Of a stretch of 64,000 bases of DNA, positions 30,961-43,469 are shown piece by piece. Source of the stretch: Euprymna scolopes (taxonomy: Eukaryota). The stretch lies in assembly GCA_053919585.1 (NCBI GenBank), contig CM132793.1; one strand, written 5' to 3'. The notes beneath the pieces were generated by a model that saw only the letters and a program-made list of their open reading frames with translations, searched no databases and was not told the origin of the DNA. Position 1 is the stretch's first letter; every line of letters starts with the position of its first letter. The translations under genes and the position numbers were made by a program.

Positions 30961-32538
30961 TTCACATTTTCGAAAGACGTCTATGAAATATATTTTTCAT
31001 GTTGACGCAATCTATATTTATTTTATATTTTGTAAAAAAATATTTATGAATTAATATTTATGGACAAGTTATGCACACATGACAATATGATAGACGTGTA
31101 ACCGCACTTTAATGGCATGTTTATTAATGTACAATATAATTTCTTTCAAGTTAATAACGATTGTTGTCTCGTAATTAATCACCGAGTGATCTTTTTCCGG
31201 TGCACAGCAAAACTATATTTTCCTTGAAAGGTAGATCTGAAGATTGTACTAAATGCACTGTCCATATACCTCTCTTAACAGATATGTGAACAGTGGAACA
31301 AGATCAAACATCTCCTCCGTTTCCGTAGTAAAAAGCAGGTTTATGAGCAACAGACAGATACTCAGAGACCGCGGGATTGGGGCGATTTTTAATGCATAAT
31401 CTCGGATCAGTTTCTACACTGAAGCGTGAGATGTAGGTAAGTGTAAGAGGGTTAAGTTAATGGTAACTGTTAATGAAGGGCTTCCACTCCGGAGTTTCAA
31501 ATTGGAGAATTAAGCCATAAAGGACATTTGGTCACCAAATATAAATAAGGCTTAGCATTATTTTTTGCATCGGTCAAATTGCGATATACGGCGTTCCCCA
31601 CTAACTCACCTTTTCTTTGACATTCACTGATGTTGACATTTATATATTGGGAATTACATCCTTTTTAACTGTAAATATTTGTTAATTCTATAAGAATAGT
31701 ATTTAAAAAGAACTACCGTGATTTGTGCACGACAGTTGTTCCAGGAAAGCGAATACACAAGGAAATTACGCTCATTTTAATTTATCTTGTTCTTTACTCT
31801 ACGTTTTACTTAGTTATAAATATGTATTATACATGTTATAATTATTAAATTTACTACTAAAATATAAACATTTGCTTTTAATGACTACAAAAGAAACTAA
31901 TCAAAGCAAGGATTATATAAAAGCACGCAAAGCAAGATAAATTCTTCTACAAATAAATACGATTCCATATAGGTAAACATTAATACCTGAGCATTTGCGC
32001 AGTTGATTTACCGATTTTATCAAACGTTCATTTATAGTTCAAACGACCGATAAAATCAATTACCTCAAAAAAAATTCATATCACACTTGTGGATATTTTT
32101 CACACATGAAATCAGGACAAACACTAATCCTCCACTAAAAGTTAAAGGTACTTGCACTGATTGTACAACATTTTATCCGTTGGAAAATTGTGAATACGTT
32201 TAAGTAAAGCAAGATGACTATTTTTCGACACAGATACGGTAATACTTTGTCGACACGTTAGTATAGAACAATGGGCAAATGGCAACCAACAAACCGTTAT
32301 CTTAGTCTCAGTACATCTATTGGAAGCAACTGAAAAAGTGATTTCTATGTGCAATGTTAACATCACATTCTAGAGGTAACAACGGCTGACTGTTAGGTCT
32401 TCGCTGGAACATTTCCGAGGGCGTAAAACGGTCTATACCTACAACTTATCATTCCGTCAAGTATGATACCATAGAGGACACATTCGTTTCGTAACATGGA
32501 ACGCAGAGCTAAAACTGTCTTGACATGAGGAGGTAACA

Positions 32539-32675
32539 GATGTCTATTCCGAAAGCCGTTCTTAACATGGGGAGTTTTAAAGTGTCTATTCCGACAGCCG
32601 TTCTTTACATGGAGAGGTTTGAGATGTCTATTCGGAAATCCGTTCTTAACCTGGTGAAATTGGGGTGTTTATTCG
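32539..32675. repeat. 42-bp tandem repeat, ~3.3 copies
   Basis: Unit ~gatgtctattccgaaagccgttcttaacatggggagttttaa. Confidence 0.85.
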
Positions 32676-33732
32676 TTGTAAGCCCATCCGAAATCCTATA
32701 AAAGTGAACATTTACAATGTGAACGGTTAGTTGGACATGTAAAAAATATCCAAAATATATACCAAATTGACTATATTCGTTTAAAAATTAAATTATTTCG
32801 TTTTGTTAAACAACTTAAAAAACATTATTAAACAATTTCTTCGTTTTTATATATGAAAAAGTACGATTGTTGAATGTTATTTTTTCGATTACTTTCGATT
32901 GTGGGGAGGGACAAGTAAAAAAAAGAACAGATCAAAACGGAAAAAATTAAAATTATATTACCTGATTATAACAGCCGTAAAACAGAGAGTAATCCGAAAG
33001 TTTTACCGAAAAGATCCATCATTATGTTGTGATAATAACTAAGGCTTATTACAAGTAGTCATTTAAAAGAAAATTATCCTGAAGTCTTTGGTTCTTTTGG
33101 ATAATACTAATCAGTAGATCTAATAATATTGACCTTGTGTGCAACTGTAATAGCAAAAGTAAATAACTTATTCAGAAAACTTAAACCTAATTTACGCATT
33201 CAGCATGTAACGACAATAAATATTATTGGCGTACTGCGTATTGGATAAGCCATAGAGTTTGCAAAATATGAAGAGCACTTGTTCAAAATAAGCACTAAAA
33301 TAGTCAGATGTATTTCAATGAGCATTTCTCCGAACACTGATCGGTGTCCTGTAGAGATTTCTTGCTAGTGGATTGGTGGGTGAATCGGGAATGCAGCAGA
33401 AAACATTAGAAAGATTTTATAAATTTATCCTTGAAATTAATATTGCCGATTCTAAAATCCTATCAGCCAATAGGCATGCATTTTATCAAACGAAGGATCT
33501 GTTTTAGAACTAGGTTAGTGGTTTTAGGTGGCCGTTCTCCTTTTTTTATATACATATAAATATANNNNNNNNNNNNNNNNNNNNNNNNNNNNNNNNNNNN
33601 NNNNNNNNNNNNNNNNNNNNNNNNNNNNNNNNNNNNNNNNNNNNNNNNNNNNNNNNNNNNNNNNNNNNNNNNNNNNNNNNNNNNNNNNNNNNNNNNTTGT
33701 TAGTTTTAAAGCTATTTTGTATCGCTATCCTA

Positions 33733-34885
33733 TGGTTCATATGTGTTTTTATCTAAGTGTAACGTGACGTCCAGGAAGTTTGTTATTTTTATGTTTGCTG
33801 ATATGTCCGATTAGATGAGGCCTAATTTTTTCATTTCTTTGTGTATGATTTTCTTAAAGTTTTCTTCCTTGACTTTGTTGGAGGTTTTTATTATAGCTAG
33901 TCCGTCATCTCTATATAGGCCGATATCCGTAGTATCGAATATGCTTGTGAGGGTATATAGAATGAATAATCCCACAAGATCTGATGCCTCTGCAGAGTCT
34001 CTGGCACCCATCGCCAAATCGAATGAATTTTTCATTTTAGTTTTTATCCATTGGTTATTATTATTTATTAGAACTGATTTTCTACATTTTTTAATTATGT
34101 TGACTTCTTCTGAGAATATATCAGTGTATACCTCGGCAAATTCTAGGACAATGTTAAAAAGTTCTTCGGATATCGAGGGATAAAAGTCTATGATGGCAAA
34201 CTGTATGAACGTACATTTATCTTTGTTTTCTATATTTTTAAACCAGGTGATTGCTTCGGTAGTATTTGCCCACTGGTTTAGTTCTAGGTCCTGTTTGATG
34301 TGTTTGTTTACTCTAGAAAGTATAGTTTTGCTAATTCTACCTATTTCTGGTTTAGTTGGGTTTACCAGGCGGGTGCTGGGATTATTATTAAAGTCCCATT
34401 TGTGGTCTTTAAGCAGAATGTATGACTCTCTAGGTTTCAATTTGCCAACTTTATCGCTAATTTTTGTTTATCGGTAATTTGTTTACTTTCAGTATTTATT
34501 ATATCTATGTAATTGCATTTGTTTGTGTCTAGTTTTTTGTAGTGTTTTGTAATGTTTTCTGTGATTAGTTTGTTATATTATTGCTTATCTATTTTATAAA
34601 AGTTTATTGTTTTATCTGCTTTTACAAAGATTTTATTAGAGTTGTTTATGTTTCTAATGATTTTGTGTAGTTTCCGTTGGATATTGTAAGGTTGATTGTG
34701 GAATTCTAGGTTTTTAATTACGTTTAAAAGGTCATTTTCAAAGTTTATCAAAAGGTGTATTGTTTTCGCATTTTTAAGGGTTTTAAAACCATAAGATTCT
34801 TTGTTGTTTACGTTTTCATTTTTAAGGAAGAAATTTGCTCGCCATCGCATTCGGCGTATTAGTTCATCTGTTTTTTGGATTGATT
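33733..34885 (-). pseudogene. PLE reverse transcriptase (disrupted, 5'-truncated, C-terminally deleted)
   Basis: RRMRWRANFF, YGFKT, FENDL, VKADKTINFY, LKDHK..F.NNPSTRLVNPTKPEIGRISK, FAIIDFYPSI, FDLAMGARDSAE, GLYRDDGL (catalytic DD), NFLDVTL. Confidence 0.92.
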
Positions 34886-34896
34886 TAATAATATAG

Positions 34897-35178
34897 CGAT
34901 ACTATGACCACAAAAGCACATTCAAAAATAAAAAGCACCGTATAAAAACAACACTAGCGAATAAATACTGGGAACTCAAAGAAAGCGGACATTCGCCGGT
35001 AGTCGAATGGAAAATAATGAGACAAGCTACCACATGCAGACATTTAGACGACCCATGTAAATTATGCCTCCATGAAAAATTTTCTATCCTGTACTTTAAA
35101 GACCCTCAAAATCTATTAAACTGTAGGCGGGAAATTGCAAACAACTGTGTTCACAAAATAAAACTTACTCTAGGATAG
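34897..35178 (+). pseudogene. PLE GIY-YIG endonuclease C-terminal half (open frame, missed by the ORF track)
   Basis: Manual translation RYYDHKSTFKNKKHRIKTTLANKYWELKESGHSPVVEWKIMRQATTCRHLDDPCKLCLHEKFSILYFKDPQNLLNCRREIANNCVHKIKLTLG*; RxxxH, CxxCxxE, LLN and CxH motifs. Confidence 0.88.
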
Positions 35179-35439
35179 CGATACAAAATAGTTTTAAAAC
35201 TAACAAAAACACTAGAAAACAAACAAATAAATAAATTAAATAAACATGAATATACATAAACGATCATACACATATATGTATATATATATGTATATATGTA
35301 TATATATATGTGCATTATTGTGTATACATAGGTATATTACTATGTATAAAAAAAAGAAAAAAAGAAAAAAAGGAGAACGGCCACCTAAAACCACTAACCT
35401 AGTTCTAAAAATATCCTTTGTTTGATAAAATGGATGACC

Positions 35440-35514
35440 ATTGGCTGATAGGAAGGAGTGCGGTGGATACTAGAAAGCTGATTGGCCAACTTGAAATCCT
35501 CAACATATATAAAA
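35440..35514 (+). promoter_or_regulatory. Putative pLTR Pol II promoter (two inverted CCAAT boxes plus TATA box)
   Basis: ATTGG at 35440 and 35481; TATATAAAA at 35506-35514, about 30 nt before the hammerhead. Confidence 0.5.
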
Positions 35515-35536
35515 ACAAGAAGCAACGACAGAATTC

Positions 35537-35600
35537 GCGCATAAGCCTGACGAATCCTTTAGTTGGATGAAACGCAGAATATTCAGTGTAGCTTAATCGC
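35537..35600 (+). ncRNA. Type I hammerhead ribozyme
   Basis: Stem I gcg-ca-taagc/gctta-at-cgc; core CTGACGA; stem II atcc/ggat with loop tttagtt; GAAAC; stem III acgc/gtgt with 10-nt loop; cleavage triplet GTA (35588-35590). Confidence 0.88.
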
Positions 35601-35726
35601 CATATATATATTTTATAAATTACTAACTAGCTCTACCTACGTATTAGCACTTTTGAAGTAAATACTTAAAGTTTACGCATAAATCTATACTTTCGTGTAT
35701 TAGATTTATGTGAATAAATGAAGTAG

Positions 35727-35808
<82 letters not shown>

Positions 35809-36930
35809 CCACCACTCGGCCTACACTGTCACTTTACGCTGGTCTAGTAATAAATAATTGATATCGAAAATATACCTAAATAATAGCCTAAACAGTATCC
35901 TTTCAAAAGCAACTCAAATGTGTATATATAATTTACCTTAATAATTATATTATACTTCTCGAACTGTCTTGTGCTCATAAGTCTTTCAGTTTGCACTTTC
36001 TTCCTCAAAGAAATGTAACCTCTTTGTAAATAAGTTTAGCNNNNNNNNNNNNNNNNNNNNNNNNNNNNNNNNNNNNNNNNNNNNNNNNNNNNNNNNNNNN
36101 NNNNNNNNNNNNNNNNNNNNNNNNNNNNNNNNNNNNNNNNNNNNNNNNNNNNNNNNNNNNNNNNNNNNNNNNNNNNNNNNNNNGTGTGCGTGCGCGTGTG
36201 TGTGTAAATGAGTGTGTGTGTGGATGTGTGATCGTGTGTGTGTGTTTGTAAAGATAAATATATATAAATATATATATAAAATATATGTATACATATATGT
36301 ATATCTATGTGTATGTATACGTACACGTATATATGTATGTCTAAATGCACATATATATATATATATATGTGCATTTAGACATACATATATACGTGTACGT
36401 NNNNNNNNNNNNNNNNNNNNNNNNNNNNNNNNNNNNNNNNNNNNNNNNNNNNNNNNNNNNNNNNNNNNNNNNNNNNNNNNNNNNNNNNNNNNNNNNNNNN
36501 NNNNNNNNNNNNNNNNNNNNNNNNNNNNNNNNNNNNNNNNNNNNNNNNNNNNNNNNNNNNNNNNNNNNNNNNNNNNNNNNNNNNNNNNNNNNCATAACAA
36601 CGGAGCGAAATTCCAAGTTTCGGGGTGCATGTATTCTGCTATTCAGTTCTTTCAGTATATCAACACTTTAGTACATTTAATATACCCTTAAAACTTACTT
36701 AAGTAAACATGCAATGTTAATACATTTATAGACTTTTTTGGACATTATATGCACATACCCCGTTGTCTTCAAGAAAATAGGGTAAACGTCAGGAAGAAAC
36801 AACATTGACAGATAATTACAACGCAAAGAAACATGTCTTGATAATCTACATGAATTTAATTGTAAGACACATGTGTGCATATGTAACTGAAATTAAGTTC
36901 AAAATTCCTACAGGTATAAGTAGATATACG

Positions 36931-37012
<82 letters not shown>

Positions 37013-37871
37013 CTTGTGTGTGTGTGTGTGTCTTAGTGCCGGCGCCTGTGTCCGTATTATTTGGATTCGGACGTGAGTTTGATTTTCGATGACACCTCCG
37101 ATCTTCTTTAGGTATATCTTGTCGAACTCGGGAATATTTCTGTCGAACACAGGAATTTAGACGGAATTTCTAGCGGAAATCTTTATTTACTTTATTTTGA
37201 CGGTGTTATTCCGTCAGCTATGACTGGATCACGCTGTAAGTAATTCGAAATTTACTTCTCGATCGCCCACACTGAAAATTGAACCTTCAACATTCAGTAG
37301 AATATCCCTTTTTTACAATTGATTTTTCCAAGTACTCTTACCACTGCGCCGCGGACAATTGTTGTACGAATTTTGGAGCCTTAAACCTATTTTACTTCTA
37401 GTTGTAAATATCACTATTTATTACTAATTATTTCTATATATTAACGTATATCAATATATCACATATCTACTCACACACACACACACACACACGCATATAT
37501 ATATATTAATTTACGTATTACTTGTATATGTTATTCATTGTTTAAAATTAATGGTTCTCATATCGTATTAAATTCTATACTAGGTCTACTTAGTAATTGA
37601 TTATTCCCCAGCATATGTGCTGCTTCTTTGCATCGTCTAACTGTCCTCTGGGTATATTTTTTACTTCGTCCTTTGTCTATACTTTTTAGGTGATGATAGA
37701 TGGTTTCCCTTTTCCCTCCAGATATGGTCAGCTATACCTTATTTTTTCAATCTTTCCACGTACTACAGCTGTTCGATATTCTCCAGACCGCACTGTTAGG
37801 GACTATGGGAACAGTAGTCCGATGAATCAAAATAATTCGAATAACCAAACCTCAGTTAATATATTCAGAAA

Positions 37872-37920
<49 letters not shown>

Positions 37921-38018: not shown

Positions 38019-38071
<53 letters not shown>

Positions 38072-42794: not shown

Positions 42795-42866
<72 letters not shown>

Positions 42867-43469
42867 AATTTTGCACACATCTTTAAACATTATTTAGCTA
42901 GGTTAATTTCGTAAGGGTAAAAATAGTTTTAAGATTTTAATTGAACGTTTCTAACATTATTTGGTTTTCTAATACATACAAAGTAACTTTATGAAGTAAT
43001 GTTTTGAAATATGTGACCAAACTTCTATTGAAAATTTGCGTCAACTAAACAAATATACACATTAATTTCAGACAAACAAAAACACCCAGACGTACTTTCT
43101 CTTCCTCCACTAGTTGTGGACGTGTTAGTGTTAATACCACCAGCAATGTGAAGAAAACGATATTAAACCAATAGGTTTATTTGTAAAATATGCTTTAGAA
43201 TAAAAGTCTCGCACTAAAATATAATTTTAATCATTTACTAAAAATCGTTTATACCACTATTAACTTGTTTTTTTCGAAATAATATTTTCCAATATGTAAT
43301 TAGAATATTTATATTATAAATTCGCGTTAACCAACAAATAACACATCTAGATTTCAGATTTCAGCAGTTGTAAGTAACCCAAGACACATTTTTCTTTCTC
43401 CACGTGGCGCATACACATATATGATATTACCAATAACAAAATAACGATATAAATATATATATATATATA

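What the first reader, a model, noticed from the sequence alone, without database searches (positions are those of the whole stretch)
35537..35600. Apparently intact type I hammerhead ribozyme in the pLTR of a Penelope-like element
Seen: all core nucleotides (CUGACGA, GAAA, GUA cleavage triplet) and three pairing stems. Stem I has a 2x2 internal loop that could contact loop II. Known: PLE pLTRs carry hammerheads, often minimal ones with a very short stem III thought to act as dimers. Inference: here stem III has 4 pairs and a 10-nt loop, so it may cleave as a monomer. It remains intact although the RT is dead, so any plus-strand transcript through the locus could be cut after 35590.
Basis: partly seen in the sequence, partly recalled or inferred. 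Interest (0 to 1): 0.75.

Follow-up and report, generated by a model that had tools for sequence, protein, structure and literature searches.

The report
Hammerhead ribozyme in a Penelope retrotransposon
The motif is a real type I hammerhead ribozyme sequence in the end region of a broken copy of a very abundant Penelope-like jumping gene of a mollusc, so it is an expected kind of feature, but it is an unusual variant whose genomic copies hint at where its RNA starts and may be cut.

Summary
Observation confirmed. Window 35537-35600 (+) has every hammerhead core nucleotide, three helices and a GUA site (cut predicted between 35590 and 35591). It is the only such motif in the 64 kb, and none appeared in 300 random 64-kb sequences.

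It lies in the 3'UTR/pseudo-LTR of a 5'-truncated plus-strand copy of a Penelope-like element (RT plus C-terminal GIY-YIG). That copy is joined head-to-head to a broken minus-strand RT copy. The family has at least 45,000 copies in this 5.9-Gb mollusc genome.

- No Rfam hammerhead model scores it, although RF00163 finds other, canonical hammerheads in the same genome.
- It departs from the canon: pair 10.1-11.1 is A-U, not G-C, and helix III is 4 bp with a palindromic loop.
- Three subfamilies keep the core. They vary at N7 and the loops, and have one clean compensatory pair.
- Monomer cleavage is possible but weakly supported: the helix III hairpin is -2 kcal/mol, while the dimer is favoured by about 11 kcal/mol.
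- RNA reads cross the site with no pile of ends.
- Intactness beside a dead RT only reflects a young copy.

New lead: perfect head-to-head junctions cluster at hammerhead nucleotide 1 (4,502; a TATA box sits at -31) and at the cut site (338), against 21-63 at control palindromes.

Other readers of this scan noted hammerhead/Penelope pairs elsewhere in this genome.

The parts
35537..35600 (+). Type I hammerhead motif. Helix I 35537-46/35591-600; core CUGACGA 35547-53; helix II 35554-57/35565-68; loop II 35558-64; GAAA 35569-72; helix III 35572-75/35586-89; loop III 35576-85; A17 at 35590. Predicted cut between 35590 and 35591.
35506..35513 (+). TATA-like box (TATATAAA) whose first T lies 31 nt upstream of hammerhead nucleotide 1. 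It is conserved with the same spacing in the W and A/G subfamilies. Inferred promoter element.
35481..35485 (+). Inverted CCAAT box (ATTGG) about 55 nt upstream of hammerhead nucleotide 1, conserved across subfamilies. Inferred promoter element.
35601..35625 (+). Stretch from the hammerhead to the first (short) 3' terminus of the element. Many genomic copies end at the equivalent of 35625 and run straight into (TA)n.
35626..35727 (+). Optional 'tail' of about 100 nt, up to the second (long) 3' terminus. In tandem copies the next unit's 5'UTR and ORF follow directly.
   Evidence: PMC11167929 and PMC8557442 for the tail concept
35728..35807 (.). (TA)n microsatellite abutting the 3' terminus; the usual insertion target of this family.
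35179..35536 (+). 3'UTR of the element between the endonuclease stop codon and the hammerhead. 35175-35454 is repeated in inverted orientation at 33458-33732.
34897..35178 (+). Last 93 codons plus the stop codon of the GIY-YIG endonuclease ORF of the 5'-truncated plus-strand copy.
33731..34903 (-). Broken RT part of a second, minus-strand copy. It is 5'-truncated about 17 codons into the ORF, has a stop and a frameshift, and ends after the YRDDG motif. It is joined head-to-head to the plus-strand copy at 34897-34903.
33458..33732 (-). 3'UTR segment of the minus-strand copy (equivalent to 35175-35454), with an N gap inside. It stops before the hammerhead, so the window holds only one hammerhead.

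Best explanation
This is one copy of the hammerhead carried in the pseudo-LTR of a very abundant, recently active Penelope-like retrotransposon of a mollusc (another agent of this scan calls it a cephalopod). The element has a C-terminal GIY-YIG endonuclease.

Layout of the unit. In the element's own unit the hammerhead begins at the inferred transcription start: a TATA box at -31 and an inverted CCAAT box at about -55. It ends 25 nt before the first of two reverse-transcription start sites, which are the 3' termini at 35625 and about 35727.

Proposed mechanism in source copies (inferred):
- Transcripts start with, or in tandem units read through, the ribozyme.
- The ribozyme folds, most stably as a dimer through its palindromic helix III, or with help from the element's protein.
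- It cuts after the GUA in a minority of molecules.
- Both uncut and cut RNAs are copied from the internal start sites on both nicked strands of a (TA)n target. This gives the head-to-head pairs.

At this locus the motif is a bystander in a truncated, inverted composite. It could cut plus-strand read-through RNA but has no demonstrated role here.

Shown: the motif, the element context, the copy number, conservation between subfamilies, the two 3' termini and the junction hot spots.
Inferred: the promoter and transcription start, in vivo cleavage, and the dimer or protein-assisted mode.
For: Motif and significance.

Element context:
- Contiguous homology from 34897 to about 35730 in many loci.
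- In L002 and L004, an RT frame running through a Cys-rich linker into GIY-YIG, followed by the 3'UTR with the hammerhead and then the next unit's ORF.
- GIY-YIG at 22.4 bits, E 1.5e-4.
- 417 RT homologues in other invertebrates.
- Some genomic copies keep frames of about 780 aa.

Abundance: 45,469 exact hits of the 15-nt 5' half, against 21 for the control, with all four bases seen at N7.

Conservation: three subfamilies keep C3-A9, GAAA and GUA. They differ at N7, loop II, 10.1 (A or G), 15.5/16.5 and by a compensatory C-G/U-A at 10.3-11.3. Overall 85.6% of cells are paired, against 30-42% when partners are slid.

Dimer: -36.4 against 2 x -12.5 kcal/mol.

Termini and tail. These match the two RT start sites and the tail of PLEs (PMC11167929, PMC8557442).

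Promoter boxes.

Counts of perfect palindromic junctions:
- 4,502 at hammerhead nucleotide 1.
- 338 at the cut site +/-1.
- 21 at the GAATTC just upstream.
- 63 at the 8-nt loop III palindrome.
- 35 at the TTAA 3 nt downstream.
Against: - No Rfam hammerhead model scores it.
- 10.1-11.1 is A-U or G.U, whereas G-C is called highly conserved in PLE and canonical hammerheads (PMC4209133).
- Fold z-score is only -0.56, and with flanks the minimum-energy fold is not the hammerhead.
- RNA reads cross the cut site on both strands and no pile of ends is listed. However, the raw-read libraries are oligo-dT single-cell ones, which are poorly suited to this.
- Covariation rests on essentially one inherited compensatory event, and the copies were picked with anchors that include core bases.
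- Junction hot spots could reflect RT stalling at the base of helix III, or amplification of palindromic units, rather than cleavage.
- No direct evidence for the transcription start.
- In the one PLE studied biochemically, the hammerhead needed protein and was dispensable for insertion (PMC11167929).
Confidence: 0.7

Rival explanations
1. Fast monomeric self-cleaving ribozyme. The 4-bp helix III with its 10-nt loop lets each RNA cut itself without a partner.
For: - The minimum-energy fold of the 64 nt is the monomeric hammerhead.
- The older D subfamily has G.U at 15.5/16.5, which gives a contiguous 7-bp helix III hairpin of -6.4 kcal/mol.
- Fungal PLE hammerheads with a large helix III cleave as monomers (PMC4209133).
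Against: - In the window's subfamily the hairpin is only -2.0 kcal/mol, and helices II and III are about 50% populated.
- In the A/G subfamily the monomer minimum-energy fold is not the hammerhead.
- The loop palindrome is conserved in all subfamilies and favours the dimer by 7-11 kcal/mol.
- Reads span the site.
Confidence: 0.2
2. Catalytically inert hammerhead-shaped element. The fold is kept in source copies because it serves something else, such as leader structure at the transcript's 5' end or protein binding near the RT start sites. It does not cut RNA.
For: - A-U or G.U at 10.1-11.1, and no Rfam hit.
- No read ends at the site.
- The Anolis PLE hammerhead is inactive without protein and is not needed for insertion, and no RNA-seq ends were found there either (PMC11167929).
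- Naiad PLEs thrive without hammerheads (PMC8557442).
Against: - All catalytic positions are kept in three subfamilies, while N7 takes all four bases. A mere structural element would not need that pattern.
- There is a junction hot spot within 1 nt of the predicted cut, 5-16 times the control palindromes.
Confidence: 0.25
3. Chance resemblance in AT-rich repeat DNA.
For: Poor fold z-score; no Rfam hit.
Against: - 0 hits in 300 random 64-kb sequences.
- The motif is a fixed part of a family with at least 45,000 copies, its core is kept across diverged subfamilies and it has a compensatory pair.
- It lies where PLE hammerheads are expected (PMC4209133).
Confidence: 0.02

Closest known systems
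Hammerheads of Penelope-like elements (Cervera and de la Pena 2014, PMC4209133)
   Same: Type I motif in the pseudo-LTR of an EN+ PLE. Palindromic helix III/loop 3 suggests dimers. Massive copy number. Inverted pairs on opposite strands.
   Different: - The metazoan PLE motifs described there are 'minimal' (helix III absent or 1-2 bp), with a long helix II, an extra nucleotide between 9 and 10.1, and a highly conserved G10.1-C11.1.
- Here helices I and II have canonical sizes and helix III has 4 bp plus a 10-nt loop.
- Here there is no extra nucleotide, and 10.1-11.1 is A-U (G.U in one subfamily).
Hammerhead and 'tail' of the Anolis Poseidon element PAc (Frangieh et al. 2024, PMC11167929)
   Same: The hammerhead lies just upstream of two adjacent internal RT start sites, which give an optional tail. 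Both target strands are nicked and extended. The targets are AT-rich. No RNA-seq ends are seen at the cut site.
   Different: - The PAc motif overlaps the start codon and lacks a helix III. Here the motif is about 195 nt upstream of the ATG and has a helix III.
- The tail is about 100 nt here, against 30-40 bp.
- Nothing has been tested biochemically here.
Canonical metazoan type I hammerhead / non-LTR retrozymes (Rfam RF00163; Cervera and de la Pena 2020, PMC7229834)
   Same: Same core and topology. The same genome holds such motifs at 42-57 bits, some in 410-nt tandem repeats next to (TA)n.
   Different: Those are 45-nt motifs with G10.1-C11.1 and a 2-bp helix III capped by UCGA. The present 64-nt variant is not scored by the model at all, and it belongs to the autonomous element rather than to short tandem repeats.
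Neptune/Nematis-type canonical EN+ PLEs (Craig et al. 2021, PMC8557442)
   Same: C-terminal GIY-YIG preceded by a Cys-rich linker. (TA)n target bias. Pseudo-LTRs, an inverted 5'-truncated partner, and a tail at one end only.
   Different: Clade assignment was not tested by phylogeny. The linker here reads C-x-C-x5-C-x5-C rather than the published CX2-5CxxC.

Membership tests
Hammerhead ribozyme, type I | Core nucleotides C3 U4 G5 A6 N7 G8 A9, G12 A13 A14, the A15.1-U16.1 pair, and H17 not G | tested here: met
   CUGACGA at 35547-53, GAAA at 35569-72, U at 35589, A at 35590. Kept in three subfamilies.
Hammerhead ribozyme, type I | Three helices around the core, with helix I open (both RNA ends in helix I) | tested here: met
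   helix I 5+3 bp, helix II 4 bp, helix III 4 bp. Loops close helices II and III.
Hammerhead ribozyme, type I | G10.1-C11.1 pair at the base of helix II (near-universal, and part of the metal site) | tested here: not met
   A35554-U35568 in the window. A-U in 56 and G.U in 15 of 78 copies. An axolotl family with U.U at this place is a natural precedent (PMC7229834).
Hammerhead ribozyme, type I | Scores above threshold with a curated covariance model (Rfam RF00163 and related models) | tested here: not met
   No hammerhead hit at gathering score or at E<=10, even on 78 nt. The same model finds other motifs in this genome at 42-57 bits.
Hammerhead ribozyme, type I | Helices supported by compensatory changes | tested here: inconclusive
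   85.6% of cells paired against 30-42% when slid. There is one clean two-sided change (C-G in 45, U-A in 25 at 10.3-11.3) plus wobble changes. All come from one genome's subfamilies, so there are few independent events.
Hammerhead ribozyme, type I | Site-specific self-cleavage 3' of H17, giving 5'-OH and 2',3'-cyclic phosphate ends | not testable with these tools
   RNA reads show no pile of ends, but the libraries are unsuitable. Indirect hint: 338 head-to-head junctions within 1 nt of the site, against 21-63 at controls.
Penelope-like element (canonical, C-terminal EN) | Single ORF with RT followed by a GIY-YIG endonuclease | tested here: met
   - L002 has a continuous 326-aa frame running from the RT C-terminal part through the Cys-rich linker into the GIY-YIG motif.
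- Pfam GIY-YIG scores 22.4 bits against a cut-off of 22.6, E 1.5e-4.
- RT motifs (KDHK, FDIxDFYPSI, YRDDG) were read by eye and are invariant among 26 homologues.
- Pfam RVT and a PDB profile search gave nothing.
Penelope-like element (canonical, C-terminal EN) | Pseudo-LTRs from partial tandems, inverted 5'-truncated partner copies, and an optional tail at one end | tested here: met
   - Tandem units in L002, L004 and L015; inverted partners in more than 10 loci and in the window itself.
- Two 3' termini, at 35625 and about 35727.
- In head-to-head pairs, one arm is long and the other short.
Penelope-like element (canonical, C-terminal EN) | RT groups with PLE/TERT reverse transcriptases in a phylogeny | not tested
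   Only homologue retrieval was done. There was a weak Drt3a RT hit for one homologue. No tree was built.

The most novel reading that the evidence does not exclude
The genome keeps a fossil record of the 5' ends of this element's RNA. There are thousands of perfect head-to-head mini-insertions, made when cDNAs primed on both target strands run off the template. They join at exactly two places: hammerhead nucleotide 1, which would be a TATA-driven transcription start, and the predicted cleavage site. If this holds, it is genomic evidence that a Penelope hammerhead sits at the very 5' end of the element's own transcript, that it cuts in vivo in a minority of molecules, and that both cut and uncut RNAs are reverse-transcribed.
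Probability: 0.3. Interest if true: 0.65.

Novelty: new member of a known kind. Interest (0 to 1): 0.42.

Why it matters
Hammerheads in Penelope-like elements have been known since 2014, so the feature itself is expected.

Three points give it some value:
- This abundant family is missed by every Rfam hammerhead model. It carries A-U or G.U at the near-invariant 10.1-11.1 pair, so it tests how much that pair matters in nature.
- The role of PLE hammerheads is still called unclear (PMC8557442), and RNA-seq has failed to show cut ends (PMC11167929).
- The junction hot spots at hammerhead nucleotide 1 and at the cut site suggest that 5'-end statistics over tens of thousands of genomic copies could answer whether these ribozymes act in vivo, without any RNA data.

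Tried and rejected
- Rfam at gathering score and at E<=10, on 64 kb, 501 nt and 78 nt: no hammerhead hit.
- Pfam on the window's own ORF pieces: nothing.
- Pfam on intact relatives: only a borderline GIY-YIG hit and no RT.
- Pfam and NCBIfam on homologues, and a 26-sequence profile against PDB: no usable RT hit.
- The reading that the hammerhead lies outside an element bounded by the 33458/35454 inverted repeat was rejected. Homology is contiguous across 35454 in many copies.
- The reading that a diverged subfamily has a dead core (CUGGCGA in L023 and L026) was rejected. Most copies of that subfamily have CUGACGA.
- Variation by position class within subfamilies (core 1.7-5%, stems 5-9%, loops 4-10%) is not used as evidence, because the copies were picked with anchors that include core bases.
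- Two rows were left out of alignment A3 for odd length: L019:874-933 and L048:1757-1831.
- Template-switch-oligo reads at about 35460 and 35005 were considered as 5'-end evidence and set aside. They lie next to G runs and may be copies of one molecule.
- A cross-species check on L096, a 47%-identical homologue from another organism, found no hammerhead downstream of the EN with my descriptor. It found only canonical motifs 1-2 kb upstream.
- The (TA)n-junction histogram was swamped by the palindromic class and left too few simple junctions to count.

Full report
**1. The observation**

The sequence at 35537-35600 (+) reads as a complete type I hammerhead.
- Helix I: 35537-46 pairs with 35591-600. 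It has 5 bp next to the core, a 2x2 internal loop, then 3 bp.
- Core: CUGACGA at 35547-53.
- Helix II: 4 bp, with a 7-nt loop.
- GAAA at 35569-72.
- Helix III: A-U, C-G, G.U, C-G, closing a 10-nt loop.
- GUA, with A17 at 35590.

RNAfold returns this fold as the minimum-energy structure (-12.5 kcal/mol). It is no better than shuffles, however (z = -0.56).

My descriptor scan finds it as the only hit in the window. There were none in 300 random 64-kb sequences under the strict descriptor.

No Rfam hammerhead family reports it, even at E<=10 on 78 nt.

Two features depart from the canon:
- Pair 10.1-11.1 is A-U.
- Helix III and its loop are long. Rfam's type I model has only 45 positions.

**2. 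Context**

The window comes from a 5.9-Gb genome. Run labels point to a mollusc, and another agent of this scan calls it a cephalopod.

The 261 nt around the motif have more than 2,000 candidate matches. The best 40 are 94-97% identical.

Comparison with 29 loci shows that 34897 to about 35730 is one contiguous piece of a repeat.

In L002 and L004 the sense strand reads as follows:
- the RT C-terminal part,
- an Asn-rich stretch,
- a Cys-rich linker,
- the GIY-YIG motif,
- a stop codon,
- about 360 nt of 3'UTR,
- the hammerhead,
- about 135 nt,
- then the next unit's ORF, beginning ME...

Pfam gives GIY-YIG at 22.4 bits against a cut-off of 22.6. The RT is not hit by Pfam or by a PDB profile. 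It does have the motifs KDHK, FDIxDFYPSI and YRDDG, which are invariant among homologues from other invertebrates.

These features match a canonical Penelope-like element as described in PMC8557442 and PMC11167929:
- RT followed by a C-terminal GIY-YIG endonuclease;
- tandem units that form pseudo-LTRs;
- inverted 5'-truncated partner copies;
- insertion into (TA)n.

The window itself holds a composite:
- a minus-strand copy (33458-34903) that is 5'-truncated, internally deleted and carries a stop and a frameshift;
- a plus-strand copy (34897-35727) joined to it head-to-head, which retains only the last 93 endonuclease codons, the 3'UTR and the hammerhead.

Some copies elsewhere in the genome keep open frames of about 780 aa, so the family was active recently.

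**3. Family and conservation**

The 15-nt 5' half of the motif, with N7 left free, occurs 45,469 times against 21 for the control. All four bases are seen at N7.

The loci in hand fall into three subfamilies:

| Subfamily | Core | Helix II / loop II | 15.5/16.5 |
|---|---|---|---|
| W (the window's) | CUGACGA | AUCC/GGAU, 7-nt loop II | A.A |
| A/G | CUGAAGA | 10.1 = A or G, 6-nt loop II | G.A |
| D (older) | CUGACGA | 5-bp AUUCU/AGAAU, 4-nt loop | G.U |

All three keep every catalytic position, GAAA, GUA and the internal loop of helix I.

On 79 copies, 85.6% of cells form pairs, against 30-42% with slid partners. Pair 10.3-11.3 is C-G in 45 copies and U-A in 25.

This supports the structure, but it amounts to few independent events within one genome. 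W and D differ at about 12 of 64 positions, which is the same as in the flanks. None of those differences falls in the core, and only one breaks a pair, the terminal one.

The window's copy differs from the commonest W hammerhead at one loop II position. Its intactness next to a dead RT is therefore what a young copy would show by chance.

**4. Monomer or dimer**

| Subfamily | Helix III hairpin (kcal/mol) | Dimer vs two monomers (kcal/mol) | Note |
|---|---|---|---|
| W | -2.0 | -11.4 | helices II and III each about 50% populated |
| A/G | -2.4 | -7.2 | the monomer's best fold is not the hammerhead |
| D | -6.4 | -11.4 | helix III is contiguous |

Loop III contains the palindrome GAAUAUUC in all subfamilies. 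Two molecules can therefore form an 18-position helix III.

A palindromic helix III is the mark of dimeric metazoan hammerheads (PMC4209133). The Anolis PLE hammerhead needs the element's protein (PMC11167929).

A dimeric or assisted mode is at least as likely.

**5. RNA**

Two raw-read runs and two contig sets were laid on 34897-35725.
- The raw-read runs are oligo-dT single-cell libraries.
- The region is covered on both strands.
- Depth is continuous over 35590/35591.
- No place is listed where many molecules begin or end.

This neither shows nor excludes cleavage. Copies sit in both orientations in many transcripts, and the libraries do not capture 5'-OH ends. The same negative result was reported for Anolis (PMC11167929).

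**6. Architecture around the motif**

Copies end at two places: the equivalent of 35625 and of about 35727. Each terminus is followed by (TA)n, in roughly equal numbers in my sample. In head-to-head pairs one arm is long and the other short. This matches the PLE 'tail' and the two internal RT start sites (PMC11167929, PMC8557442), though the tail here is about 100 nt.

Upstream, a TATA box lies 31 nt before hammerhead nucleotide 1, and an inverted CCAAT box lies about 55 nt before it. Both are conserved in the W and A/G subfamilies, although the sequence between them differs.

**7. Junction hot spots (a lead, not part of the finding)**

Perfect palindromic head-to-head junctions were counted genome-wide:

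| Junction site | Count |
|---|---|
| GCGC that begins the hammerhead | 4,502 |
| AAGCTT, within 1 nt of the predicted cut | 338 |
| Control: GAATTC just 5' of the motif | 21 |
| Control: 8-nt loop III palindrome | 63 |
| Control: TTAA 3 nt 3' of the cut | 35 |

The 4,502 junctions at GCGC account for about 20% of all copies.

PLE protein nicks and extends both target strands (PMC11167929). The simplest reading is that two cDNAs ran off the same RNA 5' end and annealed through a terminal 4-nt palindrome.

That would place one RNA 5' end at hammerhead nucleotide 1, the TATA-predicted start, and a rarer one at the cleavage site.

Alternatives:
- RT stalling at the base of helix III.
- Amplification of palindromic units.
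- Central deletions in palindromes. This last mechanism should favour the longer loop III palindrome, which it does not.

I could not inspect cut-site junction loci.

**8. Comparison with what is known, and verdict**

The same genome holds canonical 45-nt type I hammerheads at 42-57 bits. Some lie in 410-nt tandem repeats with a tRNA-like module, that is, retrozyme-like (PMC7229834). The present motif is a distinct, longer variant tied to the autonomous element.

I found no paper describing cephalopod PLE hammerheads in the library searched. Hammerheads are, however, stated to be universal in canonical PLEs (PMC8557442).

Verdict: a real, expected feature, and a new member of a known kind. It has an unusual 10.1-11.1 pair, untested activity, and one side lead worth following.

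Other first readers of this scan reported hammerhead/Penelope pairs elsewhere in this genome.

Noticed in passing
Genome-wide (G000); examples at L036:1516, L037:1486, L042:1516, L060:1516: There are 4,502 perfect head-to-head junctions exactly at the first GCGC of the hammerhead, and 338 at AAGCTT within 1 nt of the predicted cut. Control palindromes give 21, 63 and 35. Pairs have one long and one short arm and lie in (TA)n.
   Followed up: partly
L090:1440-1980 (G000 C8, about 10.43 Mb) and L086:1400-1640: Canonical 45-nt type I hammerheads (RF00163, 53-57 bits; G10.1-C11.1; 2-bp helix III with a UCGA loop) sit in 410-nt tandem repeats that also hold a tRNA-like segment and abut (TA)n. This is a retrozyme-like family in the same genome.
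   Followed up: partly
window 35558-35604 (loose ends of reads): Unaligned read ends from run X11 match the hammerhead region but carry several A-to-G changes in a row. This might be RNA hyper-editing of double-stranded RNA from inverted copies, or it might be another species' subfamily.
   Followed up: no
L002:2278-3255 (-): The ORF between the RT and the endonuclease linker carries a run of about 28 asparagines, which is a coding microsatellite.
   Followed up: no
window 32518-32657: Three tandem copies of a 42-nt unit, 80-82% identical, with open frames on both strands. They are unrelated to the element.
   Followed up: no
L096:3621-4809 (a contig of another organism that holds a 47%-identical RT homologue): Two different canonical type I hammerheads alternate in an ~880-nt tandem repeat, 1-2 kb upstream of the PLE-like gene. 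My descriptor found no hammerhead downstream of its endonuclease part.
   Followed up: partly
window 35728-35807, 36930-37010, 37870-37915, 38020-38070, 42798-42870: There are many long (TA)n microsatellites within 8 kb. These are the family's preferred insertion targets.
   Followed up: no
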